From Anaeramoeba ignava BMAN (taxonomy: Eukaryota > Protista > Anaeramoebae), in contig JAPDFW010000070.1 in the NCBI GenBank assembly GCA_028826165.1, positions 806,001 to 870,000 of the forward strand: DNA of 64,000 nt, in the 5' to 3' direction. The translations under genes and the position numbers were made by a program. The notes beneath the pieces are model-generated. The model saw only the letters and a program-made list of their open reading frames with translations. It was not told the DNA's origin and ran no database searches. Below, one piece after another: positions 10,601 through 60,952 of this stretch (position 1 is its first letter; every line of letters starts with the position of its first letter).

Positions 10601-13600
10601 CGCCAAGTAAATTAAGAAAGGAATTATGAATATTCTCGAGTTTTTTGATGACGACAGGATGATGCTGACAATATTTAGTGATATTAAAAAGCCAAATTGA
10701 GGCTGAAAGACGGACAACAGAACTTCCTGAAATGAGCAGTTTTGTGGATAATGTTTCCAGGAATTGCTCCAAAACAGAATAATCTTGGGATTCCAATTTC
10801 ACTTTTTCGTTTTGATCAAATAATCCTTCATTTTGCTTAGAATCTTTAGATAAAAAGGGATTTCTAATCACTAATGAATCCCATCCAGAAAAAACCAATG
10901 TTAAAGATTCTCCAACGGAAAATTGTATGTCTTCAGCTTTGTGTTTAAGCAATCCGCACAAACCATCAGCTGCTCTTTCTTGTATTTCTTTTGTTTGTTC
11001 TCCAACACTTATAGAGCCAAGTGCATTCACAATTGATTCAAGTCGATTCGCATTATTCATAGTTAATTTCATTAATGAAATGAGTTCTTCAATTACAAAA
11101 ATTCTGTGGAAATGAGGAACAAACATCCCAACAACACCAAGCATTTTAACGGCTGTTGTTGATATTAGATCATCAGTTGATTTTGCCAAATAAAGAAAAA
11201 TGTTGATTGTTTTTATCAATGGAGAGAATAAAGAAATTTTTCCTTCATTTGGATCGTTTTCCTCCCAAAGTTTTATTTGGGATAACGATTGTGATTTGGA
11301 TGTTTTTTCGGTTGAAAACTGATTTGTGATATTAATTGGTTTGCGATTCAAATGATTTTCCAAAGACTCTTCAAAATTATGATTCCAATTCACTCGATAA
11401 AGATTCGCAATTGTAAATCCGATCACAAGAATTGAGGAATGAATATCAATAAGAGATGTTTTCTGGTCGATTCCAACAAGAATTTTAAAATGATATTCAA
11501 GAAGATCCTTGATTCTTTGTGTTTCCAAGCTGGATGCAAGCAATCCAACCATTTTGGAACTTATACTGCGAGTATTTGAGTCATTTGATCTGGTAAATTT
11601 CTTGATAAAATCAAACTCCTTTTGCCGAGAATAAATGCGAGAAAAGGAATCAAATGAGTTGATGAACAAAACAGCGAGGAAATTAAACGAAACAAATTGG
11701 AGTTCGAGGTTTGTGCTTGGAGAAGAAAGGGTTGTCCTTAATAGTTCGTGAATCGAAATCAACGGTTCTGGAATTTTACTTGTTTCCTCCAAATCCATAG
11801 TAATGAATTGCTGTTCATTTGTTGTTTCTTTTGTTTTTGAATCAATTTCCATTTCGTTGCTTTTCGCTTCCTTTTTAGAAGATGATATTTTTTGAGCTAG
11901 AAAATTCGCAATTGTTAAACCTTGTTTTTTTGCGTTATTAATCAAGCATAATAAAAGAAACTTCAAAGATTCAGAAATGACGCGTGAATTAATAAGACCG
12001 ACTGAAACAGTAGATTTTTGTTTTGGATATAATCTTTCGAGCAAGAATTTGGAAAAGGCGAAAAAGTCTGGGAAATCTACATCATTTTCACTAACAGCAA
12101 CATAATTTCTATCATGGAATTGATAAGGAACAAGTCCTCTTTTGGCTTCACTAATGACTTCTTTATTATTGTCACCCATGGAGATCAAATTGACAAAACG
12201 GGCGAAAAAATCGTTGAAAGAAAACACTTGAATCACAAAACTATTGACAACTGAACGAGTGCGATAATCCTCAATCCAGGAAATGTTTGAACGCGAGGAT
12301 AATCCAATGATGTTTTCAATTAAATACCGGATCATCTCACGAACATTCGGAGATGATTTTTGGTATGCAAACGAGAGAAGCATCAATCCTTCACGAATAA
12401 ACGGAACAATTCCACTTTGTTCCTTTTGAAATCCATCAAAGAACATTTGGATTATTTGGATATCCGACTGGAATAAATCTGGCACTCTTTGGCAAACTTT
12501 TCCGATTGCCCGATAAGCAAGACCTTTGATTCCAGGGTTTTTGGATAATGTTTCTATTAATCCTTTGTTTTCAAACGCTAATTTCGGATTTTGCTCACTT
12601 TCAAGTTCTACTTTTTTCTCAATCGTAATAAGCTGCGCCAATCCAGAAGATAAAATGATTGGTGCCATTGCACGAAATTGTTGGTCATTTGATTTCTCGA
12701 TTGTCCATATTACAAAATTAACTCCTGATTCCCTAAGTTTTGGCGATGATGATTGACCGTAAATTGAATGGAAAATGGCTTGCAAAGTTTTCGGGAATCG
12801 GTTTGTTGCCAAAATGGATTTTGATAAATACCCCAGAATTGCAATTTTCAAATCGTTTGAACCTTCTGGAATTTGTTTGTTTTTATCGCCAAGAAATAAT
12901 AAGAATAATTTGTCAATGAGATTTTCTGATTCCAAATTAGGAAGTGTGATTTTTCTTAAATATGTTTCTCCTTCATTTGCAATTATGTTTCGGAAATGGG
13001 TTTTTGCAACTAAAAGTGAAGGGAATATTTCTGCATCACTGAATAATCCACTTGAGAGAAACTGAACTATTAATGATTTTTGTTTTAATGCTTCTCCTTG
13101 TGAATCTGTTTGGAGATAATTGAATTGAATGAAATCAAGAAATATTTCTTTGTCTTTTTGATTAAAAGCAAATTCAAAAAGTTCCTTATGCTTTGATTTG
13201 TCGATTGGAACAAATACAGAACCAAAAATGGGTGCAGTAACTGATAATAATTTGATTTGGTTTTTTGGATCTTGATTTGAAATATTTCTTATTAATTTTG
13301 GAGCGTATAATTTTTTTGTCTTTTAAATATAAATTTTTGAAATAATTTTAAAATAAATTTTGAAATAAATTTTGAAATAAATTTTAAAATAAATTTTGAA
13401 ATAATTTTAAATATAATTTTTAATATAATTTTTGAAATAATTTTTGATATAATTTTTGAAATAATTTTTAAAATAAATTTTTAATATAATTTTTGAAATA
13501 ATTTTTGAAATAATTTTTAAAATAATTTTTGAAATAATTTTTAAAATAATTTTTGAAATAATTTTTAAAATAAATTTTAAATATAAATTTTGAAATAATT

Positions 13601-14675: not shown

Positions 14676-14775
14676 TTAAAAAAAAATGAAAAAATGAAAA
14701 ATAAAAAATGAAAAAAAAATATTTTTTAAAGTGAGAATTCAAAAAATAAAAATTCATTTTTTTTCTTTTCAAAAA

Positions 14776-16611
14776 ATGAATGAAATTTTATTTTTTTCTT
14801 TTTCAAAAATGAATGAAATTTTATTTTTTGGTCAAAATTTCAGTCCAGTTATTATCGAAAATAAACCAGATACAATAACAAAACCAATTCAATTTAAATT
14901 TGAAAATGAAAATGAAAATGAAAATGAAAATGAAATTAAACAAATTTCATCAACTTATTATTCACTAATTACACTTTTTAAAAATGGAAAAGCAATAGAA
15001 TATTTATTTGCAGATTTTGCATTCCAAAATAATCAAAATCCTTCAAAAATCCAAATTGAAGAAAATATTCAAAAAATATCTGTTGGTTATGAAAATGAAG
15101 CTATTTTAACAAAAGAAGGAAATGTATTTGTCAAAGGAGGAGATATTAATCCAAATAATCCAAAAGAATTTATCAATATTTCATCATTAATTGAAGATAA
15201 AAATGATAGAATAATTCAAGATATTGTTTCTGGAAGAAATTCAATTTATTTATTAACTTCAAATCAAAATGTTTATGGAATTGGTTTAAATCAATTTGGT
15301 GAACTTGGTTTAGATTCTGAAACACTTAATGAAACAGAAAAACCAATTTTAATGATGAAAAATGTTTCTAAAATATTTTCAGGAAATTCTTCATTTTCTG
15401 TTTTTGTTTTAAATTCAAATCAAGAATTATTTGGATGTGGATATAATCATTATGGTCAAGTTGGATTAGGAGAATCAAGAAAAGAAGAAGCAAAAATCCA
15501 AAAATTAACCCAAATTCAAAATATTCCAAAAGGTAAAATAATTGATATTAAATGTGGATTTTATCATTCAATAATGTTGATTGAAGATAAAAATGAAAAT
15601 CCAAAAAGAAAACTTTATTCATGTGGATATTGTCAATATAATGGACTTGGCAAGGAATATGGAAAACATACTTATGAATTTACTGAAATAAAATCATCTT
15701 TATTTGAAAATGATAATAATATTCTTGATTTTTCTGTTGGGCAATACCATACTTTGATTTTAAGTTCTAATAAGAAATTAATTGGATTTGGGAGTAATAC
15801 GTTTGGTCAATTTGGAAATGAAGATGAGCAGATAATTGAAGAAATTCCAATTCAAATTGAACTTCCTAAATTAAGATTTAATGAAGAGTTTTTTAATTAT
15901 CATATACATTGTGGATATGATAATTCATTTCTTTATTATTCTTCTTTTTGTTCTTTTTCCAATCTTGAAGAAGATTTGATAAAATTATTTAGAAGAAAAG
16001 AATTTTGTAATATTTCATTTAAAACAGAAAATGGAGAAATAATCAAAGCTCATAAATTAATATTGAAATATAGATTAAATCAAAATCAAAATCAAAATGA
16101 AAAACTTCAAGAAATTATTTCAAAAAAATCAATTAAAGAATCAAATCAAATATTTGAAATGATTTATTCAAATAATTCTAAAATAAATCCAATATTATAT
16201 TCTGAAATTAAAGAAATTATAAATTTAAATGAAAAAATTGAAGAAACAATGAAAAGAATTTATTTAAATGAAAATGAAAATGAAAAAGATTTTATAATTG
16301 AAAGAAAAGAAAAACAATATAAATTTCCAAAATTAATATTAATAATGAGAAGTGAATTATATCGAGGAATGTTTTTATCTGTAACAGAAGATAAATCCAA
16401 TAAAGTTACAGATTATAGTGAATTAAGTAATAAATCATTTCAATTATTTGAATATTGGATTTATTCAAATCAAATTAAAAATGAAATTGAAGTTACAAAA
16501 GAAATAATTAATGAAATTCAAACAGGAATTGATTATTTTCAATTAAATGAAACAAATCCAAATTTATTTGATTTATTAATTAACAAATTTAATAATCAAA
16601 ATCAAAATTAA
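14776..16611 (+). CDS. RCC1-repeat plus tandem BTB/POZ-like protein (start ATG 14776 or 14809)
   Basis: RCC1 repeats (VYGIGLNQFGELG, FGCGYNHYGQVG, IKCGFYHS, SVGQYHTL, GFGSNTFGQFG); BTB-like segments IKAHKLILKYR and LILIMRSELYRGMF...DYFQL. Confidence 0.88.
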   Translation: MNEILFFSFSKMNEILFFGQNFSPVIIENKPDTITKPIQFKFENENENENENEIKQISSTYYSLITLFKNGKAIEYLFADFAFQNNQNPSKIQIEENIQKISVGYENEAILTKEGNVFVKGGDINPNNPKEFINISSLIEDKNDRIIQDIVSGRNSIYLLTSNQNVYGIGLNQFGELGLDSETLNETEKPILMMKNVSKIFSGNSSFSVFVLNSNQELFGCGYNHYGQVGLGESRKEEAKIQKLTQIQNIPKGKIIDIKCGFYHSIMLIEDKNENPKRKLYSCGYCQYNGLGKEYGKHTYEFTEIKSSLFENDNNILDFSVGQYHTLILSSNKKLIGFGSNTFGQFGNEDEQIIEEIPIQIELPKLRFNEEFFNYHIHCGYDNSFLYYSSFCSFSNLEEDLIKLFRRKEFCNISFKTENGEIIKAHKLILKYRLNQNQNQNEKLQEIISKKSIKESNQIFEMIYSNNSKINPILYSEIKEIINLNEKIEETMKRIYLNENENEKDFIIERKEKQYKFPKLILIMRSELYRGMFLSVTEDKSNKVTDYSELSNKSFQLFEYWIYSNQIKNEIEVTKEIINEIQTGIDYFQLNETNPNLFDLLINKFNNQNQN

Positions 16612-20289: not shown

Positions 20290-22019
20290 TAAGAAAAAAG
20301 AAAATAAAATTTTATTTTTTGGTTTAAATCAATATCCAAAACTTATCAAAAAAGAATCAGATACAATAATAAAACCAATTCAATTTAAATTTGAATATGA
20401 AAATGAAAATGAAAATGAAAATGAAAATAAACAAATTTCATCAACTTATTATTCAATAATTACACTTTTTAAAAATGGAAAAGCAATAGAATATTTATTT
20501 GCAGATTTTGCATTCCAAAATAATCAAAATCCTTCAAAAATCCAAATTGAAGAAAATATTCAAAAAGTAACTGTTGGTCATGAAATTGAAGCTATTTTAA
20601 CAATAGAAGGAAATGTATTTGCCAAAGAAAGGAGAAGATATTAATTCAGATAAATTTATCAATATTTCATCATTAATTAAAGATACAAATGATAGAATAA
20701 TTCAAGATATTGTTTCTGGAAGAAATTCAATTTATTTATTAACTTCAAATCAAAATGTTTATGGAATTGGTTCAAATCAATTTGGTCAACTTGTTTTAGA
20801 TTCTGAAACACTTAATGAAACAGAAAAACCAATTTTAATGATGAAAAATGTTTCTAAAATATTTTCAGGAAATACTTCATTTTCTGTTTTTGTTTTAAAT
20901 TCAAATCAAGAATTATTTGGATGTGGATATAATCATTATGGTCAAGTTGGATTAGGAGAATCAATAAAAGAAGAAGCAAAAATCCAAGAAATAACCCAAA
21001 TTCAAAATATTCCAAAAGGTAAAATAATTGATATTAAATGTGGATTTTATCATTCAGTAATGTTGATTGAAGATAAAAATGAAAATCCAAAAAGAAAACT
21101 TTATTCATGTGGATATTGTCAATATAATGGACTTGGCAAGGAATATGGAAAACATACTTATGAATTTACTGAAATAAAATCATCTTTATTTGAAAATGAT
21201 AATAATATTCTTGATTTTTCTGTTGGGCAATACCATACTTTGATTTTAAGTTCTAATAAGAAATTAATTGGATTTGGGAGTAATACGTTTGGTCAATTTG
21301 GAAATGAAGATGAGCAGATAATTGAAGAAATTCCAATTCAAATTGAACTTCCTAAATTAAGATTTAATGAAGAGCTTTTTAATTATCATATTTCTTGTGG
21401 ATATGATAATTCATTTCTTTATTATTCTTCTTTTTGTTCTTTTTCCAATCTTGAAGAAGATTTGATAAAATTATTTAGAAGAAAAGAATTTTGTAATATT
21501 TCATTTAAAACAGAAAATGGAGAAATAATTGAAGCTCATAAATTAATATTGAAATATAGATTAAATCAAAATCAAAATCAAATTGAAAAACTTAAAGAAA
21601 TTATTTCAAAAAAATCAATTAAAGAATCAAATCAAATATTTGAAATGATTTATTCAAATAATTCCAAAATAAATCCAATTTTATATTCTGAAATTAAAGA
21701 AATTATAAATTCCAATGAAAAAATTGAAGAAACAATGAAAAGAATTTATTTAAATGAAAAAGATTTTATAATTGAAAGAAAAGAAAAACAATATAAATTT
21801 CCCAAATTAATATTAATAATGAGAAGTGAATTATATCGAGGAATGTTTTTATCTGTAACAGAAGATAAATCTAATAAAGTTACAGATTATAGTGAATTAA
21901 GTAATAAATCATTTCAATTATTTGAATATTGGATTTATTCAAATCAAATTAAAAATGAAATTGAAGTTACAAAAGAGATAATTAATGAAATTAAAACCAA
22001 AATCAAAATTAAAAATTAA
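20290..22019 (+). pseudogene. Frameshifted and 3'-truncated paralog of the RCC1-BTB gene at 14776-16611
   Basis: Near-identical DNA to copy 1. An extra AAAG at ~20624-20631 gives a TAA at ~20642. No ATG at the equivalent start, and the C-terminal QTGIDYFQL... is replaced by microsatellite. Confidence 0.8.
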
Positions 22020-23521: not shown

Positions 23522-24488
23522 TCAATTCCAAACAAAAATTTCTAAAATTCGAACCAATCTTTGATCAGTTAAAAAAGCATCTAACAAAGAAATATCTGAT
23601 CTAATTGAAGTGAGAATTTGTTTGAATTGTGGATCTTGTAAATATGGGGAAGTAGTTGAATTTTCTGATAATCTTGACCAAAAATTTGGACTTGTAAAAA
23701 ACTGACCAATTGGATCTTGATTTCTTTGATTAATTGGATTTGGATTTGGATTTGGATTTTGGAATGGATTTTGATTTCGAAGTTGATTTAGTTGTTGTCT
23801 ATTTTGATTTATTCGATTTTGTTCTATTTGAAATAAATTTTGAATTGGATTTTGATTTTGATTTTGATTTTGATTTTGATTTTGATTTTGATTTTGATTT
23901 TGATTTTGATTTGGATTTGGAATTGGATTTGGATTTTGATTTTGATTTGGATTTTGATTTAACTGATTAAAAAAATCACCAAAAATTGAATTTCGATTTG
24001 GATTTGGATTTGGATTTGGGTTTGCATTTGGATTTGCATTTACATTTTGATTTTGGTTTCGATTTAAAAATAAATTCCTTAATGCATTCATTGCATTTTG
24101 ATTTGGATTTAAATTTTGATTTGGATTTAAATTTTGATTTTGATTTTGATTTAAATTTTGATTAGGATTTAAATTTTGATTAGGATTGGGATTAGGATTG
24201 GGATTGGAATTTTGAATTTGAATTTGAATTTGTTGACGAAAAGGATTTTGATTTTGATTTTGATTTTGGTTTTGATTTTGGTTTTGGTTTTGGTTTCGAT
24301 TTAAAAATAAACTTCTTAATGCATTCATTGCATTTTGATTTTGAGTTGTAGTTTGAGTTGCAGTTTGATTTCGATTAGGATTATTAACTATATTATTTAT
24401 ACTATCCCTAAGTGCAAATAAATTAATATTTGGATTTTCATTTCTATTTTCATTTCTATTTTCGTTTTGATTTTGATTTTGGTTTTGA
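23522..24488 (-). CDS. N/Q/P-rich linker plus STI1/HOP DP-type domain; probably the true C-terminus of the Ariadne gene (1-nt frame offset at ~24489)
   Basis: [58 protein letters not shown] resembles the HOP DP1/STI1 motif. The ORF has no credible independent start. Confidence 0.6.
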
Positions 24489-27400
24489 GTTTTGATTTTG
24501 ATTTTGATTTTGATTTTGATTTTGATTTTGATTTTGATTTTGATTTTGATTTTGATTTTGATTTTGATTTTGATTTTGATTTTGATTTTGATTTTGATTT
24601 CTTCTCTCATGATTGTCTCTTATTCTATTCAACCGATATTGAAGTGATTCCTTGAAATTACTTTTTGGATTTTGTAATTTTGATTTTGGTTCTTCAAAAA
24701 GATTTTCATTAGAAGGTTTCAATGGAATATTTTTTGGGAAAAGCTCCTCCAAATCATTATCCCATCTACTCTTCCCAAAAGAAATTTGAGAATTTTTCTT
24801 TACATTATCTTCAAAAAGATTGCCATTTTTATCAACTTCATCTAAGGTTTCCAGCATTGCAAATCTGCGGGATTTTGCAAGTTTTGTTAAAGAGCGAAGA
24901 TGTTCTGTTTCTATTTTGGGGAGATTTTCAACAGAATGGGATAATTCTTCAGTAACTTTTTCCAAATCAGTTTGAGTATAAAGAAACAAATCTTGGACAT
25001 TTCCTGTTGGACAATAAAATCCAAACACATATGAGTATTTCAATGCGTATCGGTTATCCACTAATGCATCCAAAGCCTCAAGAATAGACAAAACCCGAAA
25101 ATATAAAGGGTCTTTTTTCCGCATTTTTTTGATATCTTGAGACACTCTGTTATAGAAATTTTTTTCGAATCCTAGTGAAGTATTGTGGTTTTTGTATCTT
25201 TGAAAATGATGCTGAAATCTACGAATACTTTCTTGATCTTTTTCAAGTTCTTTCTTTAATCGTGTTTCATTTTTTTTCGCATCTTCGAAACGATTACAGT
25301 TATGTGTTACTGTGAAATCTCTTAATAAGAATCGTTTATTACCATCAACAGTGATTCCATAAAATTCCCCAATTCCATTATGTTTCTCAACTTGGAAATG
25401 ATATATCTCTTCTTCTCGTATTTTGATATATGGATTTTCCAACCGATTTTTAAATTGATAAATTTTCAAATAATTCTTTGTCTGAGTTGGTAATAACAGA
25501 TAATTTTTGATCGAAAGCTTGAAATAGCAGTTTTCTTCTGATAAAATTCTTAGTTCCTTTAAATCTTTTTTATTTTTTGTGAAATCTCTTTCGAATTGCC
25601 AAAAATCATGTGCATCTTGATAACTAACAAAAGCTTTAAGCTCAATATGATTATTGTTTCTGTTTTTGAATTGCACAAGATAATTCACTTCATTTTGATT
25701 TTCAAATTTCAAATCCAACAAATGCTTCTCACTTGCAAAGAAGCTTTTCCCATTTTCTTGAGTAACTTTAAATTTGACTTCTTTAATTTTGATTTTTTGC
25801 AATAGTTGTTGCTCAAAAGAATCCAAATTGGAATTTTCTCTTTTTTTATTAGCCAACTTTCTGATCTTTTCTCCCGAAAGTTTAATTTCAATTGAAGAGT
25901 TTTTATTCTCTATAAACTTGGATTGAGAAAAAATCCCAAGAATTTTTGCCAATAATTGAATATCAAATATTAATGGATTTTGCTTATTCAAATGGAAAAC
26001 GACTTCCTCTTCATTTTGTATTGATCCTATTGAGTCAATCAATCCTAACAAAAAATCTTCTTGAATATTTCGAGAATTGAATAAAAACTCATCTGGAATT
26101 TGATTTTGGGAATTTGAATTGATTTGTGATGCATATATATAAGGATTAGATGATGTTTTTTGAGAAGCAAAATAGGTTCCAACTTGATAACCTGAATGAC
26201 TTGATTTCCAGTTCTTGGATTTATGGAAAAGATAATCATGAACACTAATATCTATTTTATCTCCAAAAATTGCTGTTTGATCTGTTTGAATTAATTTGGG
26301 TAAATAAGTTACAATTTGAAAAAAGCAATTCATGACTTGTGTTTTTTTGTATTCATTTGAAATGTAAGAATCATAAATTTTTTTAAAAGATAAATTTCGA
26401 GATAAAATTGGGAGAACTTCTTCGTTCCATAAATATTCCATTTCTAAATCTAAATCTAAATCTAAATCTAAATCTTGATTTTCAAAATTGTCAACATCAA
26501 AATTTATGCGCATTTTGTCATGTGTTTTTTTATCAAAATAAACAATTTGCCAATAAATTTTGTTTTTGTTCTGGTCAAATTTGAAATCTAAATATGGATT
26601 GGAAGTTAATTTCAAAGAGATGAGATGTGATTCGTTGACAACATATGATTCTTCATTTGATTGAGAAATTTCATATAATTTTCCTTTGCTATGAAAAATA
26701 TCTGTAACAAGTCGGCGATTATTTTTAAAATTTTTGGAATCTCCAATTAAAAAATCCCCAACTTTAATATTCTGAATTTCTTGAATTTTTAATTGATTAT
26801 TTTTTGAGACTAATAATTTAGTTCCATAAGCAAGACAATTATAATATGAAGTATGACCTGCCCAGTTTCCTAAGCAAACCCAACAAAACTCATGTTTACA
26901 TTTTGGACAAGTCATATGACTAAGCACAAAAAAAATTTTATTCAAAGTGAATAATTTAATTTAATACAATGCAATAAAACATTTTGATTTTTGATTAATT
27001 AGAGTTAAATTACTTGCAACCTCCGTTTTTTTCTATTAATGTTTTACATTCTGGACATGGCTTTGTATTTTGAGTTATCCAAATTTCAGTTTGTTGATCA
27101 CTTACACCTTCATTAATTTTAATTTTCCATTCTTTTACTTGTTCACAATTTGCAGGACCATGAGGTTCATCATTACAAAGCACACTAACAAATTTTTTGA
27201 ATAAATATTTAAATATTTGAATAAATAATAAATAAATTTTTAAACAAATATTTAAACAAATATTAAATAAATAATAAATAAATTTTTAAATAAATATTAA
27301 ATAAATATTTGAATAAATATTTAAATAAATATTTAAATAAATTTTTAAATAAATATTTAAATAAATATTTGAATAAATTTTTTTATTACCAAAAACGATG

Positions 27401-29206
27401 TCCACATTCACATTTAGCCATACTCAAATATAATTGAGATGGTTGAATAACTCTATCACAACCAGGAGCAGGACACCATTTCACAAACGGATTTTCATCC
27501 ACAAAAGATTTTGCTTGAAAAGATTGAAACTTTTGAAATAATTGATTGTCAACAATTGATTTTATAAATTCTTCATGAACTTTTTCATCACATTTATATC
27601 CAGGACAAGGAATAGCATTTACCTAAATAAAAGAAAGAAAGAAAGATATATAAAGCAAGATAGATAAATATAAATATGAATATAAATAAAATAATTCATT
27701 TTCATTTTTGAATTATTATAATCACTTGTGCTTCTTTAATCCGTTGAGTTAAGTATTCCTTCCAACAATTTTTGCAGAAATAATGTCCACAAGTAAGAGC
27801 AAGTAAATTAGATTGATCATCTTCATAACTCTCTTGACAAATTGGACAAATAACATTAGGAATTCTTTGATTTGATACTTTTTTATTAACTTCATATTTA
27901 ATTCCAGCTTTTTTACAAGTTGTATAAGGTTCTTTAAAATATCTTTAAAATAAATAATTAAATAATTAAATAAATAAATATTTAAATAATTAAATAAATA
28001 ATTAAATAAATAATTAAATAAATAATTAAATAATTAATAAATAAATAATTAATATTTCATTCAATTTATAAATTTATAAATTTACTCTATCAGAAGTTTT
28101 TCTTGATTCCAGTTAAATGCTCTTAATAATAAAAGGCAATCATCTTGTGATCTTTGAACAACTTCTGAAACTTGGAAAATCATTTTTTTTTGCTTTTTAA
28201 AAATATCTTTTTCTGTAAGAAATTTTTTGGATTTTCTTGTTTTAGGTTGTGCTAAAAAAGATAAATCATCATCTTCAAGATTTCCTGGTGTTTCAGTGCT
28301 TTCATTCATCTATTGTAAATTGATATAATTTATTTATTAATTTATTAATTAATTTTTTTTGTTTCAAATTTTCCATTATTTTTTTTTGGAAAATAAACTT
28401 CTTCTTTTTCTGATGAATCTTCCAATTCAATTTCATTTTCATTTTCATTTTCATTTTCTATTTCAATTTCATTAATATTTTCATTTTCATTTTCATTTTC
28501 ATCATCAATTTTATCATGTATTTCTTCATCTGATTCTGTATTTCCCCAAAAATCTTCAATTTTTTTCTTTTTCTTTTTAATTTTTTTTTCTAATCGATTT
28601 TCTATTTGATTTTCTAAATCATTTTGTTGGTTATTTTGGTTTCCTTGAATAATTTTGAGTTCATTTTCTTTTTCTTGATTCTAAAATCAAAATTAAATTT
28701 AAAATCAAAATTAAAAATTAAAATTGAAATCAAAATTGAAATTGAAATCAAAATTGAAATTAAAATCAAAATTGAAATTAAAATTGAAATTAAAATTGAA
28801 ATTTAAAGTCAAATTTAAATTTAAAATTAAAATCAAAATTAAAAATTAAAATTGAAATCAAAATTAAAATTGAAATTAAAATTAAAATTAAATTTAAAAT
28901 CAAAATTAAAAATTAAAATTAAAATTAAAATTAAAATTAAAATTAAAATTAAAATTAAAATTAAAATCAAAATTAAAATTGAAATTAAATTTAAAATTAA
29001 ATTTAAAATTGATTTACTTCATCTTGTTGCTTTTTTTCTTCTTGTTTTCTTTTTGTTCTTTCAAGTTGTTTTTCTTGAATATATAACATTATCATTGGTA
29101 AGTCAAATTCTTCTAATTCTAATTTTTTAATTGCTCGTCTTGATCTATGTGTTGAAATTCCCATTCTTTTTAATAAATAAATAGCACTTGGTTTTTGTAA
29201 ATCCAT
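24456..29206 (-). CDS. ARIH1: Ariadne-family RBR E3 ubiquitin ligase (UBA-like, acidic, RING1-IBR-RING2-Ariadne) with an in-frame intein; exons ~29206-29018, 28680-28399, 28309-28086, 27942-27726, 27622-27390, 27184-27014, 26919-24456
   Basis: [13 protein letters not shown]; RING1 CPIC...[16 protein letters not shown]...CPGYKC; [11 protein letters not shown]...CECGHRFCVLC...PHGPANC; RING2 [42 protein letters not shown]|CNRF; Ariadne domain [12 protein letters not shown]...[10 protein letters not shown]...[12 protein letters not shown]. Confidence 0.92.
25299..26837 (-). mobile_element. Intein, 513 aa (Hint domain plus degenerate LAGLIDADG homing endonuclease), inserted in Ariadne RING2
   Basis: Block [10 protein letters not shown]; IKVGDFLIG; block [12 protein letters not shown]; block E-like [10 protein letters not shown]; block H-like [11 protein letters not shown]; blocks [24 protein letters not shown] followed by Cys+1. 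Removing the 1539 nt restores the conserved YYN-CNRF. Confidence 0.96.
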
Positions 29207-29289: not shown

Positions 29290-30380
29290 TGGATTTTTAT
29301 TAAAATTAAAATTAAAATTAAAATTAAAATTAAAATTGAAATTAAAATTAAAATTAAAATTAAAATTAAAATTAAAATTGATATTAAAATTAATTTAAAA
29401 TTAAAATTGATATTAAAATTAAAATTAAAATTAAAATTGAAATTAAAATTAAAAAATTAAAATTAAAATTAAAAAATTAAAATTAAAATTGAAATTAAAA
29501 TTAAAATTAAAATTAAAATTAAAATTAAAATTAAAATTGAAATTAAAATTAAAATTAAAATTAAAATTAAAATTAAAATTAAAATTAAAATTAAAATTAA
29601 AATTAAAATTGAAATTAAAATTAAAATTAAAATTGAAATTAAAATTAAAATTGAAATTGAAATTAAAATTAAAAATTAAAATTAAAATTAAAATTAAAAT
29701 TAAAATTAAAATTAAAATTAAAATTAAAAATTAAAATTAAAATTAAAATTAAAATTAAAATTAAAATTAAAATTAAAATTAAAATTAAAATTAAAATTAA
29801 AATTGAAATTGATAAAATTAAAATTAAAATTAAAATTAAAATTAAAATTAAAATTAAAATTAAAATTAAAATTAAAATTGAAATTAAAATTGAAATTAAA
29901 ATTAAAATTAAAATTTATTAAAATTGAAATTAAAATTAAAATTAAAATTAAAATTGAAATTAAAATTGAAATTGAAATTAAAATTAAAATTAAAATTGAA
30001 ATTGATATTAAAATTAAAATTGAAATTAAAATTAAAATTAAAATTAAAATTAAAATTAAAATTAAAATTAAAATTAAAATTAAAATTAAAATTGAAATTA
30101 AAATTGAAATTGAAATTAAAATTAAAATTAAAATTAAAAATTAAAATTGAAATTGAAATTAAAATTAAAATTAAAATTGAAATTGAAATTAAAATTAAAA
30201 TTAAAATTAAAATTAAAATTAAAATTGAAATTAAAATTGAAATTAAAATTAAAATTAAAATTAAAATTAAAATTAAAATTAAAATTAAAATTGAAATTAA
30301 AATTGAAATTAAAATTGAAATTAATTTAAAATTGAAATTGAAATTAAAATTGAAATTAAAATTGAAATTAAAATCTAAAT
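29290..30380. repeat. Hexamer microsatellite (AAAATT/GAAATT)n, intergenic
   Basis: Visible directly. Confidence 0.95.
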
Positions 30381-31444: not shown

Positions 31445-34400
31445 ATGACTTCCGAATTTTCCAAACGATCAATTCAAAGAAGAGGAAAATATAAAAAGAA
31501 AATAGATCCTTCAGAAAACCGAATGAAAAGACAAGAATTTGTTGTAAAATTAAGCAAATCAAAACGTGAACAAGAATTTATGAAAAGACGAAATTTTACA
31601 GAAATAACAATAAAAAAAAAAGATAAAAATGAAAAAAAACTAGAACAAGTAATAAATAAATAAAAAAATAAAATAAAAAATAAAAGATAAAAAAAAAAAA
31701 TTTTTTTTTATCAATTTTGCGTCAATTTTTTATTTTGAATTTAGTTACCTTCTTTTGTTGAAATGGTTAGATCTACTGATATTAGAACTGCTTATCGTGG
31801 TCTTGTTAAAATTAGAAAGTTATTATCTGTTGAACAAAATCCTCCTATTCAACAAGTTATTGATACCCAAATTCTTCCACTTATTATAACTTTTCTTGAT
31901 TCAAATAATGAGGATTTTCAGGTTTTTATTCTTTTCATTCTTTTTATTTTTTTCCCAAATTATTTCAAGAAGCAAATAATGAACAAAAATTTAAACAAAA
32001 ATTTATAAATCAATTTATAAAACAATTTATACAAAAATTTATAAAACAATTTATAAAACAATTTATAAAACAATTTATAAAACAATTTATTAAACAATTT
32101 ATTAAATAATTTATTCAACAATTTATAAATCAATTTATTAATCAATTTATTAAACAATTTATAAAACAATTTATAAAACAATTTATAAAACAATTTATTA
32201 AAATAATTTATAAAACAATTTATTAAACAATTTATAAAACAATTTATTAAATAATTTATTAAATAATTTAAAATCAATTTATTAATCAATTTATTAAACA
32301 ATTTATAAAATAATTTATAAACAATTTATTAAACAATTTATAAAATAATTTATAAAACAATTTATTAAACAATTTATTAAATAATTTATAAAACAATTTA
32401 TAAATCAATTTATTAAAATTTATTAAAGTTAATTTATTAAATAATTTATAAAATAATTTATTAAACAATTTTAAACAATTTATAAAACAATTTATAAAAC
32501 AATTTATTAAACAATTTTATAAACAATTTATTCAAAAATTTAATTTATTAAACAATTTATAAATCAATTTATTAAACAATTTATTCAAAAATTTAATTTA
32601 TAAAACAATTTATTAAACAATTTATAAATCAATTTATTAAACAATTTATTCTTAAAACAATTTATTAAACAATTTATAAAAAAAACAATTTATTAAACAA
32701 TTTTATTAATCAATTTTAAATAATTTATTAAACAATTTAAAGTAAATAATTTATTAAAAACAATTTATAAAACAATTTTATTAAATAATTTATTAAACAA
32801 TTTATTAATCAATTTATAAATAATTTATTAAACAATTTATTAATCAATTTATTAAATAATTTATTAAACAATTTATTAAATAATTTATTAAACAATTTAT
32901 TAAATAATTTATTAATCAATTTGATAAATAATTTATTAAATAATTTATTAAATCAATTTTTATAAAACAATTTATTAAACAATTTATTAAACAATTTGAT
33001 AAATAATTTATAAATCAATTTATTAAACAATTTATAAAACAATTTATTAATCAATTTATAAAACAATTTATTAAACAATTTATTAAACAATTTATTAAAC
33101 AATTTATAAAACAATTTATTAAACAATTTATTAAATAATTTATTAAATAATTTATAAAACAATTTATTAAATAATTTATAAAACAATTTATTAAACAATT
33201 TATAAATCAATTTATTAAATAATTTATTAAACAATTTATTAAACAATTTATTAAACAATTTATAAAACAATTTATAAAACAATTTATAAAACAATTTATT
33301 AATCAATTTATTAAACAATTTATTAAACAATTTATAAAAACAATTTATAAAACAATTTATTAAATAATTTTTAAAAAACAATTTATAAAAATAATTTATT
33401 AAATAATTTTATAAAACAATTTAAAAAAAAATTTATAAAACAATTTATAAAACAATTTATAAAACAATTTATTAAACAATTTATTAAACAATTTATAAAA
33501 CAATTTATTAAATAATTTATAAAACAATTTATTAAACAATTTATAAAATAATTTATTAAATAATTTATTAAACAATTTATTAAATAATTTATTAAATAAT
33601 TTATTAAATAATTTAAAATAAAAATTTATTAATCAATTTATTAATCAATTTATTAATCAATTTATTAATCAATTTATTAATCAATTTATTAATCAATTTA
33701 TTAAATAATTTATTAAACAATTTATTAAATAATTTATTAATCAATTTATTAAACAATTTATAAAAATTTATAAAATAATTTATAAAACAATTTATTAAAA
33801 CAATTTATTAAACAATTTATTAAACAATTTATTAAATAATTTATTAAATCAATTTATAAAATAATTTATAAAACAATTTATAAAACAATTTATAAAACAA
33901 TTTATAAAACAATTTATTAATCAATTTATTAATAATTTATTAAATAATTTATTAAATAATTTATAAATCAATTTATTAAAAATTTATAAAACAATTTATT
34001 AAAAAATTTATAAAATAATTTATTAAATAATTTTAAAAAAACAATTTATTAAATAATTTATAAAACAAATTATTAAATAATTTATTAAACAATTTATTAA
34101 ACAATTTATAAATCAATTTATTAAATAATTTATTAAACAATTTATTAAACAATTTTATTAAACAATTTATTAAACAATTTATTAAACAATTTATTAAACA
34201 ATTTATTAAATAATTTATTAAACAATTTATTAAATAATTTATTAAACAATTTATAAAACAAATTTATAAAACAATTTATTAAACAATTTATTAAATCAAT
34301 TTATAAATCAATTTATAAATCAATTTATTAAATAATTTATAAAACAATTTATAAATCAATTTATTAAATAATTTATTAAACAATTTATAAAATAATTTAT

Positions 34401-36828
34401 AAAACAATTTATTAAACAATTTATAAAATAATTTATTAAATAATTTATTAAATAATTTATACAAAAATTTAAACAAAAATTTATAAAACAATTTATAAAT
34501 AATTTATTAAACAATTTATTAAACAATTTATAAAACAATTTATTAAACAATTTATAAAACAATTTATAAAATAATTTATTAAATAATTTATAAATCAATT
34601 TATAAAACAATTTATAAATAATTTATAAATCAATTTATAAATCAATTTATAAAAACAATTTATTAAAATAATTTATTAATAATTTATAAAATAATTTAAA
34701 ACAATTTATAAAACAATTTATAAAACAATTTTTAAAATTTATTAAACAATTTATTAAACAATTTATTAAACAATTTATTAAATAATTTATAAATCAAATT
34801 ATTAAATAATTTATTAAATCAATTTATTAAATAATTTATAAAATAATTTATAAATCAATTTATAAAACAATTTATTAAACAATTTATAAACAATTTATAA
34901 AAACAATTTATTAAATAATTTATAAAACAATTTATTAAACAATTTATTAAATTAAAAAATTTAAACAAAAATTTATAAAACAATTTATTAAACAATTTAT
35001 AAATCAATTTATTAAATTTATAATTTATTAAACAATTTATAAAATAATTTATTAAATAATTTATTAATCAATTTATAAAATAATTTATTAAATAATTTAT
35101 TAAATAATTTATAAAACAATTTATAAATCAATTTATAAAACAATTTATAAAACAATTTATAAAACAATTTATAAATCAATTTATAAAACAATTTATTCAA
35201 ATAATTTATTAAATAATTTATTAAATATCTAGTTTGAATCTTGTTGGATTCTTACAAATATTGCTAGTGGATCAAATGATCAAACTCAATTTTTGGTGAG
35301 TTTGAATGTAATTGATCCCCTTCTTCAATTATTAATATCTCCAAAAGATAATATTCGTGAACAAGTATATTTTGAAAACAAAAATTATATAATTAAAAAT
35401 TATAATTAAAATTTAAAAAAAATTAGGCAATTTGGGCATTAGGGAATATTGCTGGTGATAATATAAATAATAGAGATCAAATTTTGAATAAAGGAATAAT
35501 AGATTATATAATTGATTTAATTAAAAGAGCAAAAAATATTGAAGTTATTCGAAATTGCACTTGGTGTTATGCTAATTTATGTCGAGGAAAACCAAATCCA
35601 AATTTTGAAATTGTATTAAAAATTAAAATTAAAATTAAAATTAAAATTAAAATTAAAAATAAAAATTAAAATTAAAAATTAAAATTAAAATTAAAATTAA
35701 AATTATAAGGTAATGCCAATGCTTCCAATAATTGCACCTTTTATTACTTGCAATTCTGAAGAAGTTATTGCAGATATTTGTTGGGCTATTTCCTATTTAA
35801 CAGATGCAACACAAAAGGAAATACAAACAATTCTAGATTTAGATATTCATCAACATTTTATTCCTCTTTTATTGTAATTTGGAATTTAAAATATTTATTT
35901 ATTATTTAAAATATTTATTTATTATTTAAAATATTTATTCATTTATTTAAAATATTTATTTTTAGAAATCCAAATCCAAAAATATCAACTCCTGCTTTAA
36001 GAATTGTTGGAAATATTGTAACAGGAAGTGATGAACAAACACAAGCAATAATTGAATGCAATGCAATTCAATATTTAGGAAAACTTTTAAATTCTTCAAG
36101 ATTTTCAATTCGGTAAAAAATTAAAATTCAAATTCATTTAAAAAATTAAAATTAAAATTCAAATTCATTTATAAAATTAAAATTCAAATTAAAATTAAAT
36201 TAAAATTAAAATTAAAATTCATTTATAAAATTAAAATTAAAATTCAAATTCATTTATAAAATTAAAATTAAAATTTATATCAATTAGAAAAGAAGCTTGT
36301 TGGGCTATTTCAAATATTGCAGCGGGAAATTATCCCCAAGCAAAAGAAGTTGTTGATTCAGGAGTACTTCCGCAAATAATAAACTTATGTGATCAAGATC
36401 AATACGATGTCAAAAAAGAAACAACATGGATCATTTCTAATATAATTTATATTGGAGGAGATGAAGAAATGGAAAATTTAATTAATATTGGTTGCATCCC
36501 ACCTTTATGCAATATTCTTGATTATGATGACACAAAAATACTCTCAATATCTTTAGAAGCACTTGAAAAATTGTTAAAATTTGGAGAAAAAAAAAGTTCT
36601 CAAACTGGAGAAAATTATAATTTAGTTGCTCTTCTTATTGAGCAAGCTAATGGTGCTTCTAAAATTGATAGATTACAAAGACATCCTAATGAAGATATTT
36701 ATCTTGTTGCTAGTTATATAATTCATAATTATTTTGCTGAACAAGATAATTTAGATGAAGTTGTTGATCCAAATTTAGAAAATCAAGATGTTCAAGATCG
36801 AGAAATTAAAAATTATTATGATCTTTAA
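31445..36828 (+). CDS. KPNA: Importin subunit alpha; exons ~31445-31648, 31745-31921, 35233-35364, 35427-35612, 35711-35873, 35966-36112, 36288-36828
   Basis: IBB domain (RRGKYKK...KSKREQEFMKRRN); ARM repeats RKLLSVEQNPPIQQVI, QFESCWILTNIASG, EQAIWALGNIAGD, NLCRGKP, PALRIVGNIVTGSDEQTQ and KEACWAISNIAAGN. Confidence 0.95.
31922..35232 (+). repeat. 3311-nt intron made almost wholly of a 12-bp minisatellite (ATTTATTAAACA/ATTTATAAAACA variants)
   Basis: GT at 31922 and AG at 35231-35232 join DFQ to FESCW in frame. Confidence 0.92.
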
Positions 36829-37192: not shown

Positions 37193-40100
37193 TCATTTCT
37201 GATTGATAATACGAAGAAAATGAACACGACCAGTGTCATCTCCAACAATAATAATTTCTTCAATCTTAAAATCAATAGTGCATTTAATAGAAGAACAACA
37301 AACAAGTTCAGAATCAGCAGTAAATTGAGCAACAACGGTATTTCCAAGAATATCCCATAAAGTACCAACATTTTTAGAAATTGAGAACAATCTTTTCATT
37401 TGGGAAATATAACAAACACCGTTTATACCGATAGCATCTGGAACAGATAAAACGGAAGAACGTCTCAAATTGACGAAATTCCAAACTTCAATCTCGTTGT
37501 TATTTGCAGAAGAAACGACGATATGCTTATCATTAGAGGTGAAGCAGCAGCTTGTGATCCACGACTGTTGCGTGGGTATTTGGTGAAGAAGCTTGCCTGT
37601 TTCGGTTTCCCAGATAATGATTTTGTTGTCATCACCAACGGTCAATAATTGCTTTCCTCTTATTGATAAACTCAGACTCCTGACCCAGTCTGTGTGTGAG
37701 ATGAGCTGATTAATGATCTGGCCGTTGTGAAGATTCCACATTTTCACAATCGACTCATCTGCGCAACTGAATACTTGTGTTGAGTCCTCCATTACCTCTA
37801 AACCCCGCACTCGTACTTTGTGAATTTCTTTGAAACTGTTTCTTTTTTCAAAAGTTTCAAGTGACCAAACATCAATATTTCCTTGTGATCCTGAAACCAA
37901 ATATTTTTTATCCGGTGAAATGCTTAATGCTGTTATTTTATCGGTTTTGTTTGTTAGTTCTGCAATGATTCGTAGTGTTTCGCTTTGCCATATTTTGATT
38001 TTTCCATCTTGTGAAGATGTTGCGAAAATTGATCCATCTCGTGATGAACAAAGTATTTCTACTCGCATTGTGTGTCCTCGCGAGTTTTGTGGTGATGGTG
38101 TTTTTTGGATAAGTGATGTTGTTGTTAAATGGGATATTTGACTTGTTGTTATTGTTGTCGATGATGTTTTTTGTTGCGGAGTCTAAATTTAAATTAAAAT
38201 TAAAATTCAATTTAAAATTAAAAATAAGATTAAAATTAATAAGAAAATTAAAATTAAAATTAAAATTAAAATTAAAATTAAAATTAAAATTAAAATTAAA
38301 ATTAAAATTAAAATTAAAATTAAAATTAAAATTTAAATTAAAATTAAAATTAAAATTAAAATTAAAATTAAAATTAAAATTAAATTTAAATTAAAATTAA
38401 AATTAAAATTAAAATTAAATTTAAAATTAAAATTAAAATTAAAATTAAAATTAAAATTAAAATTAAAATTAAAATTAAAATTAAAATTAAAATTAAAATT
38501 AAAATTAAAATTAAAATTAAAATTAAAATTAAAATTAAAATTAAAATTAAAATTTAAAATTAAAATTAAAATTAAAATTAAAATTAAAATTAAAATTAAA
38601 TTAAATTTAAAATTAAATTTTGATTTACATTTTCATTTTCATTCAATTTATCATCTGGATTTTCATTTGATATATTTAATGTAATATTTTTATTTCGATC
38701 TTTAGTTCGAGGAAGATGAAAAGATTTACTATTTTGAGGCAAAACAGAAGGTTTTACAAGTTTAGGAGAAGGAGATTGAACTTGAGGTAAAACTCTTTTA
38801 GTCTCACCATTTAAAGAATGGGAAAAGACACTAAAAATGAGAATCAAAGAATTATCAAGAGCACAAACAAGACGGGAATTATTAAGTGCAAAAAGAAGGG
38901 CGTTTGCATGAGCTGAGCCTATTTTTCTGACATCAGAAAGAACAGTACCATCACTAAGTCTCCATAATTTGACCTCACCGTCAAGAGAAGCTGAGGCGAC
39001 AAACAGACCATCGGAAGAAACATCGAGAGCACATATTGGGGCGGCGTGTTCTGAAAAGACGATGATGGGGGTTGTGGGGTCTTTAGAGGAAGTATCGAAG
39101 ACGCGGACAGTGCTGTCATCCGAACCTGTCAAAATGAACATTGAATCAAGACTTTCTCCAAAAATATTGAGAACATTAATAGGCATACTATGCGCGCGGA
39201 ATTGTCTTTCCTGACGCTGAGTCTTGATGTCCCAAGTAATAACCATGCCGTCCTCGCCTGCAGAAACGATGTAGGATTCAAAAACCATTTTGACAGCGTT
39301 GACAGGACCTTGATGTGCTTCGAATTTGTACTTTTGTTTTGCAAGAATAACGTTTGTGACAAGAACATTTGAATCATCAGAAACAGTTGTTGCAAGAGTG
39401 GCAGTTTTGTTTGTGGCAACACAGTTTATAAAGGAGTTATGGATTTTGATATTTTTATGGACAAGTTTGGTGCGCGTTGTCCACATCTTAAGAGTAAAAT
39501 CATTGGAAACTGAAACAGCCTTCTGGCCGTTAGTAGAAAGAGCGATGGATCTAACGGCAGCATTGTGGATTTTTGTGATTTTTCCAACGGCTTTTCCCTT
39601 TTCCAAATCGTAGAGCATAACACTGCCGTTTGCATCGCCTGAGACAATGAAACCCCGGGAATCAGAGTCGGCAGCAAGACAATAAACAGGCACAGGATGC
39701 TCCGAGACAATCTCATGAAGCACGCATATGCTAGACGGCTCCTGACCGTTTCTGAAGAAGTAATCAAATGTGTATCCCGAGCTGTCAGTCAAACTTGCTG
39801 TCAACGGACACATCCACACTGGATCGACCGAGTCTGTCCCTTCCTTCAAAAGCTCATGGACGCGCTTGTCGAGATAGCGGAGAAGAGATATGCGCGCAAA
39901 CAACTGGGTCAGAAGCTGCTTGTTATGCGAGGCCAGAGCATGTTTTGATCTCTCGAGTGCATCGAGCACAAACTTGGTTACTGTGTCCTTTTTGTCTGTC
40001 ACTTTCCGCTTAAAAATCCCGAACATCTGCCCGCATGTATAGTTCGACATCAACCATTTGTAGTCGAATAATGAGTCCTTTTGCGTCGGGCTCGTCGGCT

Positions 40101-43100: not shown

Positions 43101-43710
43101 TTAATTTTGATTTTGATTTTAATTTTAATTTTAATTTTAATTTTGATTTTAATTTTAATTTTAATTTTAATTTTAATTTTGATTTTGATTTTAATTTTAA
43201 TTTTGATTTTAATTTTGATTTTGATTTTAATTTTAATTTTAATTTTAATTTTAATTTTAATTTTAATTTTGATTTTAATTTTAATTTTGATTTTGATTTT
43301 AATTTTAATTTCAATTTTGATTTTGATTTTGATTTTGATTTTAATTTTAAATTTAATTTTGATTTTAATTTTGATTTTAATAAAATTTTGCTTTTCCTTT
43401 TAATTTTAAATTGTTAAAAATAAAAGAATTTTTTTTTTTAAATAATAAAAAAATCAAGAAAATTGGAAAAAAAAAAAGAATAAAAAATAAAAATATAAAA
43501 ATAAAATACTTGTTGAAGAGATAAAATAAAAGGGAGAGCAGGAACCGAATTAACAAGCCAATTTCTAAACCAAAGTTCAATTGCAATAGGCTTTTCATCA
43601 TTCAAACTAACAAGAATTCCACCTCCATCTCTATAACCTTCACTTTCATTAACAAGAACATAACGAATAAATCCTTCTGCTATTACTTCACGTTCAATTT
43701 TTTGTGTCAT
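37193..43710 (-). CDS. PH + ankyrin repeats + NWD-type helical linker + two WD40 propellers; exons 43710-43510, 41768-41412, 41094-38629, 38182-37193
   Basis: PH (YKGNL...WKSSFAVL...LTFYK...ESERWILAI); ankyrin (TPLLFCAK, TPLHVVAK, TALMEA); many GH/WD-type repeats ending VGDDTGRVHFL. All four exons join in phase 0 at GT-AG. Confidence 0.85.
41769..43509 (-). repeat. 1.7-kb intron of (AAAATT/AAAATC)n hexamers on the sense strand
   Basis: Visible directly; bounded by GT/AG on the minus strand. Confidence 0.9.
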
Positions 43711-43934
43711 TGCTTTTTATTTATTTTTTCTGTTTATTTTCTTGTTTTCTTTATTTTTATTTCACAAAGTTTTTTTTGGTATTATTTTTAAATGTGGATT
43801 TAATATAAAAAAAAAACAAAACAAAAAAAAAATGATTTTTATTTTTTTAATTTTTTTATTTTTTATTATTTCAATAAAGCAAAAAAAAAATTCTTTTTTT
43901 ATTTAATCTAATTTTATAATCAAAAAAAAATAGA

Positions 43935-45485: not shown

Positions 45486-45604
45486 TGATATTTTTCCCTT
45501 TTTTTTTTATTTTTTTTTCATTTTTCATTTTTCATTTTTTTTTATTTTTTATAAGTTAAAAAAAATTTTTTTTTATTTATTAAATTTTTTTCTTTAAAAT
45601 ATAA

Positions 45605-47032: not shown

Positions 47033-47205
47033 TTTAATATAAAAAAAAAAACATAATTTTTCTTTTCTTTTCTTTTTTTTTTTTCTTTGATTAATTTTAG
47101 AAAAACAAATTTAATCAAAATCTTTAAAGAAGAAAATAAAATTAAAATTAAAATTAAAATTTTATTTGATTTTATTATTTTTTGTTCAATTATTTCTTTG
47201 CAAAT

Positions 47206-57489: not shown

Positions 57490-57579
57490 TTCTTTCAATT
57501 AGAAAAAAGAGAAATTTTAATTTTTTCATTTTTTCTTTTCATTTCAAAAAATAATTAAAGCAGAGAGAAATAAAAAAAA

Positions 57580-60500: not shown

Positions 60501-60925
60501 AATTCGAGATGACGGAAGAATTCTTCAAAGAAATTGGATTAAATTCAAATTGGATGAAACAAAAAAAAGGAAAAAAAGGAATATTAAAAGATTTGCATAA
60601 ATTGTATCAACAAGAATCAACAAAAGATTTCACAATAATTTGTGAAGAAAAAGAAATTAAAGTTCATAAACTCATTTTGTTAACAAGAAGTGATTTATTT
60701 AAAGGAATGTTTCAATTAAATGTTTCCGATAAATCAAACCAAGTTCATGATTATTCAGGAAAATGTTTTGAAACTTTGAATCAAATGGTTTATTTTTTCT
60801 ATCATGACAATTTCAATCAATCACAAGAAATTAACAAAGAAATGATTAAAGAATTTGAAGATGTTAAAGACTATTTTCAATTAAATCAAAATTCGATGTT
60901 GGATTTGCTTTTGAGATTTATTTAA
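57580..60925 (+). CDS. Long ankyrin-repeat plus tandem BTB protein, broken at ~58920-59015 (pseudogene or assembly error)
   Basis: About 20 ankyrin repeats (TPLHxAC...LVENGADINAKT) across two ORFs in different frames; C-terminal KDFTIIC..IKVHKLILLTRSDLFKGMF..DYFQL. Confidence 0.85.
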
Positions 60926-60952
60926 TTGAAAAGAAAGAAAGAAAGAAAGAAT

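What the first reader, a model, noticed from the sequence alone, without database searches (positions are those of the whole stretch)
25299..26837. Intein inside the catalytic RING2 domain of a nuclear, intron-containing Ariadne RBR E3 ubiquitin ligase
Seen: a 1539-nt (513-aa) in-frame insert that starts CLAYGT and ends VTHN before Cys, splitting the conserved RING2 end H-T-S-Y-Y-N|C-N-R-F. All splicing residues look intact (Cys1, block B His in NESH, penultimate His, terminal Asn, Cys+1). Established: eukaryotic nuclear inteins are rare and mostly known from VMA1, PRP8, RNA polymerases and a few enzymes, so a ubiquitin ligase is an atypical host. From memory, intein-rich Anaeramoeba genomes have been reported, so this locus may belong to that expansion; whether this insertion site is already described needs checking. 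Inference: the mature ligase needs both RNA splicing (six upstream introns) and protein splicing.
Basis: partly seen in the sequence, partly recalled or inferred. Interest (0 to 1): 0.93.

Follow-up and report, generated by a model that had tools for sequence, protein, structure and literature searches.

The report
Intein in amoeba Ariadne ubiquitin ligase
A ubiquitin ligase gene of the amoeba Anaeramoeba ignava carries a real self-splicing protein insert at its last zinc-binding cysteine; this host type is already on record in GenBank, but the insert also has an extra, apparently undescribed half-copy of its own splicing domain.

Summary
Confirmed, on the minus strand: a 513-aa class-1 intein of the VMA1/PRP8 (Hom_end) family in the last exon of a 7-exon Ariadne RBR ligase gene. 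Its +1 Cys equals human ARIH1 C389, the last RING2 zinc ligand. The catalytic Cys lies 29 residues upstream and is not split.

The genome is Anaeramoeba ignava (103 inteins, Gallot-Lavallee 2023). A paralog with a 550-aa intein at the same site is named 'intein-containing E3 ubiquitin-protein ligase ari5-related precursor' in NCBI (KAJ5076673.1). So host and site are on record, and this copy is probably catalogued too (dataset not readable here).

The homing endonuclease is decayed in both copies. Two other Ariadne paralogs lack the intein. No other organism with this site occupied was found.

Apparently new: both Ariadne inteins carry a second Hint block-B/DNA-recognition module after the endonuclease. 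It is absent from about 215 other single inteins checked, and may come from two fused tandem inteins. Zinc-gated splicing is an untested idea. No RNA or protein evidence was obtained. The scan had noted the paralog on other DNA (s1-698185).

The parts
29018..29206 (-). Exon 1 (ATG at 29206), N-terminal region
   Evidence: open frame, weak match to paralog N-terminus (13/55); least certain exon
28399..28680 (-). Exon 2, acidic low-complexity N-terminal region
28086..28309 (-). Exon 3, UBA-like domain of ARIH1 type
   Evidence: PF21235 E 1.6e-10
27726..27942 (-). Exon 4, RING1
   Evidence: zf-C3HC4 E 5.6e-8
27390..27622 (-). Exon 5, IBR domain
   Evidence: PF01485 E 3.5e-11
27014..27184 (-). Exon 6, end of IBR and first half of RING2, with the catalytic Cys codon at 27018-27016 (ARIH1 C357 equivalent); intron 6 splits the next codon
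26838..26919 (-). Start of exon 7: RING2 His (H359 equivalent) and three zinc site II ligands (C372, C375, H382 equivalents); end of the N-extein
25299..26837 (-). Intein, 513 aa, class 1, Hom_end/VMA1-PRP8 family
26172..26837 (-). Hint N-part (blocks A and B: C1, N68, H71) with an enlarged DNA-recognition-region insertion, aa 1 to about 222
25782..26156 (-). Decayed LAGLIDADG endonuclease, aa about 228-352: first motif degenerate and most of the first LAGLIDADG domain missing; catalytic Asp of the second motif is Ile270
25449..25772 (-). Second copy of the Hint block-B / DNA-recognition module, aa 356-463, His kept, block-B Asn lost
   Evidence: family HMM E 7e-8; alignment; folds alone at pLDDT 85
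25299..25433 (-). Hint C-part (blocks F and G; H512, N513)
25296..25298 (-). Cys+1, equal to ARIH1 C389, last zinc ligand of RING2 site II
24858..25298 (-). Ariadne domain (C-extein); ARIH1 S427, F430, E431 and E503 equivalents kept
   Evidence: PF19422 E 7e-8; ARIH1 E 2e-14
24456..24857 (-). C-terminal tail with a Gln-Asn repeat, to the stop codon

Best explanation
A domesticated-by-trapping selfish intein. A VMA1/PRP8-family intein of the kind common in large DNA viruses entered an ancestral Ariadne gene once, just before the last RING2 zinc-ligand Cys. The gene later duplicated (window copy and contig C61 copy). The endonuclease decayed, so the element no longer homes, but it stays because imprecise loss would break RING2. 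After removal of six introns, a 1259-aa precursor splices by the standard class-1 route: N-S shift at Cys1, transfer to Cys+1, Asn513 cyclisation, S-N shift. This gives a 746-aa Ariadne ligase in which Cys+1 becomes the fourth ligand of zinc site II. Before the duplication the intein gained a second half-Hint module, most simply by fusion of a full intein with a tandem mini-intein; that module is probably a passenger. Shown: sequence, motifs, fold, site, paralogy, endonuclease decay, extra module. Inferred: expression, splicing, viral source, fusion route.
For: Splicing residues invariant across the family and kept in both paralogs at 38% overall identity; F/G end 58% and A-B 45% identical against 21% for the insertion. 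PI-SceI fold. The two Ariadne inteins form one clade, SH-aLRT 99, and share the extra module. Host gene is intact with all RBR parts. Both LAGLIDADG motifs are intact in 35 of 66 viral relatives but in neither Ariadne copy. Relatives are abundant in IMG/VR, including giant-virus genomes. Three other Anaeramoeba inteins were shown to splice (PMC10710043). For fusion: aa 351-513 align to the end with a 194-aa endonuclease-free mini-intein lacking only its first 42 aa (score 216, next 152); copy 2 is no closer to copy 1 than to outside inteins (21st-83rd percentile); tandem or near-tandem junctions occur in 5 of 151 public hits.
Against: No RNA, proteomic or splicing data for this locus. The extra 108 aa could hinder splicing; in the full-length model residues 341-381 and 458-477 are low confidence, though the alignment did not cover them. 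The tree does not resolve the donor. An old internal duplication cannot be told from fusion with only 32 anchor columns. A later paralog-to-paralog homing event could also explain the shared intein.
Confidence: 0.78

Rival explanations
1. Zinc- or redox-gated switch. The N-extein already holds three ligands of the weaker RING2 zinc site, so Cys1 (which sits exactly where the fourth ligand belongs) or Cys+1 can complete the site in the precursor. Zinc would then stall splicing and control the amount of active ligase.
For: Geometry: Cys+1 equals C389. Site II is C372, C375, H382, C389, is thought to be the weaker site, and RING2 unfolds without zinc (PMC3772753). Zinc blocks the related Prp8 intein by binding Cys1 and the terminal Asn (PMC6805012). 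The intein is kept in both paralogs.
Against: All class-1 inteins start with Cys/Ser and need a Cys/Ser/Thr at +1, so a conserved Cys is an expected landing site. Zinc inhibition in vitro is general to inteins. With about 100 inteins in one genome, some odd sites are expected. No data on regulation.
Confidence: 0.12
2. The intein no longer splices well. The precursor, or an N-terminally cleaved RING1-IBR-RING2 fragment without the Ariadne domain, is the product, while the intein-free paralogs (C71, C81) do the essential job.
For: Two intein-free Ariadne paralogs exist. The extra module is abnormal. Catalytic Cys and His are in the N-extein, and Cys1 could stand in for the last ligand.
Against: All splicing residues and the F/G block are the best-kept parts across long divergence. 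The Ariadne C-extein is 63% identical between paralogs, more than the intein, so it is under selection.
Confidence: 0.07
3. The insert is removed at RNA level, or is an assembly artefact.
For: No read evidence could be obtained.
Against: Open frame of 513 codons at 26% GC; ends are not GT-AG; full intein anatomy; an independently diverged copy at the same site on another contig; one public run holds 69% of the sampled words, although it may be the source data.
Confidence: 0.02

Closest known systems
Anaeramoeba ignava KAJ5076673.1, 'intein-containing E3 ubiquitin-protein ligase ari5-related precursor' (contig C61 paralog)
   Same: Same genome, same host family, same insertion site, same exon layout, same decayed endonuclease and extra module; inteins are sister sequences.
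   Different: Separate gene: intein 550 vs 513 aa, 38% identical; -1 residue Thr vs Asn; long Pro/Thr-rich tail vs Gln-Asn tail.
A. ignava intein expansion (103 inteins; probably cluster 15 of Gallot-Lavallee et al. 2023, PMC10710043)
   Same: Hom_end-family class-1 inteins related to those of large DNA viruses, placed at conserved motifs of unrelated hosts; at least 41 PF05203 matches in this genome.
   Different: The main text never mentions ubiquitin, Ariadne or RING. The other 29 own-genome inteins checked have one block-B module. Cluster assignment could not be checked.
PI-SceI (yeast VMA1 intein) and fungal PRP8 inteins
   Same: Hint fold with DNA-recognition insertion plus LAGLIDADG domain; same splicing residues.
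   Different: Endonuclease truncated with both catalytic motifs lost; larger DNA-recognition insertion; second half-Hint module.
Human ARIH1/HHARI (Ariadne RBR E3)
   Same: UBA-like, RING1, IBR, RING2 and Ariadne domains; catalytic Cys/His and all zinc ligands kept.
   Different: No intein in ARIH1, in 80 metagenomic Ariadne loci or in the two other A. ignava paralogs.

Membership tests
Class 1 intein | In-frame insert between exteins that are contiguous in homologs | tested here: met
Class 1 intein | Cys/Ser at 1, block B His, His-Asn end, Cys/Ser/Thr at +1 | tested here: met
   C1, N68, H71, H512, N513, Cys+1
Class 1 intein | Hint fold | tested here: met
   PF05203 over cut-off; predicted model matches PI-SceI, E 7e-13
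Class 1 intein | Self-excision with extein ligation | not testable with these tools
   needs a reporter or proteomics
Class 1 intein | Retained in mRNA | tested here: inconclusive
Active homing (LAGLIDADG) intein | Two LAGLIDADG motifs with catalytic Asp | tested here: not met
   first motif degenerate, most of the first domain missing, second-motif Asp replaced by Ile (Met in the paralog)
Canonical single-Hint intein layout | One block-B / DNA-recognition module | tested here: not met
   two modules in both Ariadne inteins; one in 29 own-genome, 120 public and 66 viral single inteins, sets that may overlap
Ariadne RBR E3 ligase | RING1-IBR-RING2 followed by an Ariadne domain | tested here: met
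   exon-by-exon Pfam; PDB matches to ARIH1
Ariadne RBR E3 ligase | Catalytic Cys-x-His and eight RING2 zinc ligands | tested here: met
Ariadne RBR E3 ligase | Ubiquitin thioester and ligase activity | not testable with these tools
   needs biochemistry
Published A. ignava intein set (PMC10710043 Dataset S1) | This gene is listed in the dataset | tested here: inconclusive
   supplements not held; paralog carries the NCBI intein label and the maximum size of 550 aa; this copy hits it at E 6e-70, so the authors' iterative BLAST should have found it; about 80% likely

The most novel reading that the evidence does not exclude
A chimeric intein with a second half-Hint module, sitting on the last zinc ligand of an RBR ligase, acts as a zinc/redox-gated maturation switch: Cys1 or Cys+1 completes RING2 zinc site II in the precursor and splicing sets the level of active ligase. 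This would be conditional protein splicing controlling ubiquitin signalling in a eukaryote.
Probability: 0.1. Interest if true: 0.75.

Novelty: new variant of a known kind. Interest (0 to 1): 0.3.

Why it matters
The headline, an intein in an RBR ligase, is already deposited in GenBank for the paralog, though the paper's main text does not discuss it. Two points still have value. First, the extra half-Hint module is a layout I found in no other intein examined; if it arose by fusion of tandem inteins it shows a way to reshuffle intein parts, and it raises the question of which block-B His acts in splicing. Second, the +1 nucleophile is a structural zinc ligand with its three partners next door, which gives a clean natural test of whether extein-bound metal can gate protein splicing.

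Tried and rejected
Nothing suggests the contig is human; it is AT-rich protist DNA.

So the NCBI name of this copy is unknown. The last-exon ORF and the intein alone are not in the collection as exact sequences, which says little.

3. Other organisms with this site occupied: none among 150 best intein relatives, long RBR proteins of 794-2527 aa, 80 metagenomic Ariadne loci, mostly fungal-like, or 66 viral inteins. These searches are insensitive: one search missed even the paralog. A. flamelloides could not be searched directly.

4. Active homing: rejected (motifs lost).

5. Recent internal duplication for copy 2: not supported (copy 1 vs copy 2 local score z about 0), but an old one is not excluded.

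6. Donor lineage: tree unresolved.

7. Fold searches with copy 2 alone were weak: PI-SceI takes Foldseek ranks 1-8 at E 0.14-0.7; Prp8 intein Z 5.5, tied with unrelated chains; Atlas TM 0.46. The sequence evidence carries that claim.

8. Alignment A2 had a wrong coordinate range and was redone as A3.

9. Paper supplements are not held.

Full report
Observation. On the minus strand, 26837->25299 is an open frame of 513 codons that begins CLAYGT and ends VTHN, between ...HTSYYN and CNRF. Pfam gives Hom_end_hint (E 3.8e-8, over cut-off), Hom_end and a sub-threshold LAGLIDADG_3 hit. In an alignment with 50 relatives, C1, N68, H71, H512 and N513 are invariant. The alignment profile hits PI-SceI at E 1e-40 and PRP8 inteins at 1e-19. 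An AlphaFold model (pLDDT 79) matches PI-SceI at Foldseek E 7e-13. The insert does not have GT-AG ends.

Host gene. Seven exons (29206-29018, 28680-28399, 28309-28086, 27942-27726, 27622-27390, 27184-27014, 26919-24456) joined by six GT-AG introns of 89-337 nt keep one frame: 466 aa N-extein, 513 aa intein, 280 aa C-extein. Exon by exon they encode UBA-like, RING1, IBR, RING2 and Ariadne domains; best solved relatives are ARIH1 and ARIH2. The model rests on sequence and on agreement with the paralog, not on RNA. Cys+1 aligns with ARIH1 C389. In ARIH1, zinc site II is C372, C375, H382, C389, and C357 is the catalytic Cys (PMC3772753). So the intein sits just before the last zinc ligand; the catalytic Cys (-29) and His (-27) are in the N-extein. 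The Ariadne domain keeps the S427, F430, E431 and E503 equivalents, which from my own knowledge govern ARIH1 autoinhibition.

Genome and prior art. The genome (42.8 Mb, 147 contigs) has at least 41 Hom_end_hint matches. The closest relative of the intein by far is on contig C61 (E 6e-70): a 550-aa intein at the same site of a second Ariadne gene. That protein is KAJ5076673.1, named 'intein-containing e3 ubiquitin-protein ligase ari5-related precursor [Anaeramoeba ignava]'. Gallot-Lavallee et al. report 103 inteins in A. ignava BMAN, maximum size 550 aa, found by iterative BLAST and HMM searches (PMC10710043). The host family and site are therefore on record. The main text does not mention ubiquitin, Ariadne or RING and the dataset is not held. 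I put it at about 80% that this copy is catalogued too.

Paralogs. Four Ariadne genes were found: C60 (window) and C61 with the intein, C71 and C81 without. C60 and C61 have Ariadne domains 63% identical and inteins 38% identical. The two inteins form one clade with SH-aLRT 99 on a long stem; deeper placement is unresolved. The simplest history is one insertion followed by gene duplication. C81 has an intron 35 nt upstream of the empty site, and C71 has one at the same position; C60 and C61 lack it. This fits the intron-intein exclusion described in the paper but is weak, because C71 and C81 have more introns throughout.

Endonuclease. The family consensus has two intact LAGLIDADG motifs, as do 35 of 66 viral relatives. 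In both Ariadne inteins the first motif is degenerate, most of the first domain is missing, and the catalytic Asp of the second motif is Ile or Met. The element is very unlikely to home.

Extra module. A profile built from 123 public relatives hits each Ariadne intein four times. The third hit (aa 356-463, E 7e-8; E 9e-5 in C61) repeats the block-B and 'IS-x-x-Y-L' part of Hint after the endonuclease. It keeps the His, aligns with N-terminal modules of other inteins at z 9-15 (alignment), and folds alone at pLDDT 85 with the same order of strands and helices as copy 1. Structure searches with it are weak but led by PI-SceI and Prp8 inteins. None of 29 other own-genome inteins, 120 public single inteins or 66 viral inteins has it; three apparent cases were tandem inteins. 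Residues 351-513 align to the very end with an endonuclease-free 194-aa mini-intein minus its first 42 residues, and copy 2 is no closer to copy 1 than to outside sequences. Tandem or near-tandem junctions occur in 5 of 151 hits. I infer fusion of a full intein and a tandem mini-intein by a deletion that removed F/G of the first and A of the second (about 55%), against an old internal duplication (about 40%). I found no description of this layout, but could not read the paper's supplement.

Distribution. No other organism was found with an intein in an RBR protein: not among the 150 best relatives, whose hosts are mostly P-loop proteins cut at GK|T, nor long RBR proteins, 80 metagenomic Ariadne loci or viral contigs. 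These searches are of limited sensitivity. Relatives are common in viral contigs, including giant-virus genomes, in line with the paper's view of a viral route.

Mechanism. Most likely the precursor splices by the class-1 route and releases a 746-aa ligase whose RING2 site II is completed by Cys+1. The intein persists because loss must be exact. The selective pattern fits: the F/G end (58%) and blocks A-B (45%) are the best-kept parts between paralogs. The rival is a zinc switch: three ligands wait in the N-extein, Cys1 occupies the fourth position in the precursor, and zinc blocks the related Prp8 intein through Cys1 and the terminal Asn (PMC6805012). Nothing here shows regulation, and a conserved Cys is an ordinary landing site.

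Limits. Splicing and expression are untested.

Verdict. A real intein at a site already annotated in the paralog, with a dead endonuclease and an apparently undescribed second half-Hint module. Interest 0.30.

Noticed in passing
G000:C61:538789-540438 (L035): Paralogous Ariadne gene with a 550-aa intein at the same site; NCBI KAJ5076673.1; long Pro/Thr-rich C-terminal tail.
   Followed up: yes
G000:C81:67733-67614 (L037) and G000:C71 near 593594-592911 (L036): Both intein-free Ariadne paralogs have an intron about 35 nt upstream of the empty site and two more in the Ariadne domain; the intein-bearing paralogs have none there.
   Followed up: partly
window 27013-26920: An intron splits the codon between the catalytic Cys and His of RING2; the same intron position is seen in all four Ariadne paralogs.
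   Followed up: partly
L010, L026, L029 (G000:C71, C1, C102): Three inteins inserted directly before the Cys of a VAVH|CKAGLGRT phosphatase loop (CDC14-like); their N-terminal modules are the best profile hits to copy 1 of the Ariadne inteins. Another case of a functional Cys used as the +1 nucleophile.
   Followed up: partly
L016 (G000:C106:82084-85302): MCM-type intein with what looks like two block-A starts in tandem (548 vs 375 aa readings); may be two neighbouring inteins or a partial duplicate.
   Followed up: no
P0003, P0019, P0025, P0038, P0073: Public proteins with tandem or near-tandem inteins, where one intein's His-Asn end is followed at once or within a few residues by Cys1 of the next.
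   Followed up: partly
own-genome inteins: None of 31 A. ignava Hom_end inteins has both LAGLIDADG motifs intact by a strict pattern, against about half of viral and public relatives.
   Followed up: partly
window 14731-16611 and 20613-22019; 55774-61750: Two RCC1-BTB genes flank an FG-GAP/fn3 membrane protein; a Ras-BTB gene, ankyrin and ankyrin-BTB genes and a BTB gene cluster at the window's end.
   Followed up: no
window 29299-30379, 32000-35225, 38185-38617, 41770-45488: Long AT-rich tandem arrays (6-, 12- and 134-nt units), the 12-nt one about 266 copies.
   Followed up: no
window 2707-4371, 7695-12935, 37193-41085, 45605-49028: Ordinary eukaryotic genes: CCA-adding/poly(A) polymerase family, ECM29, WD40 protein, protein kinase, RasGAP-PH.
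   Followed up: no
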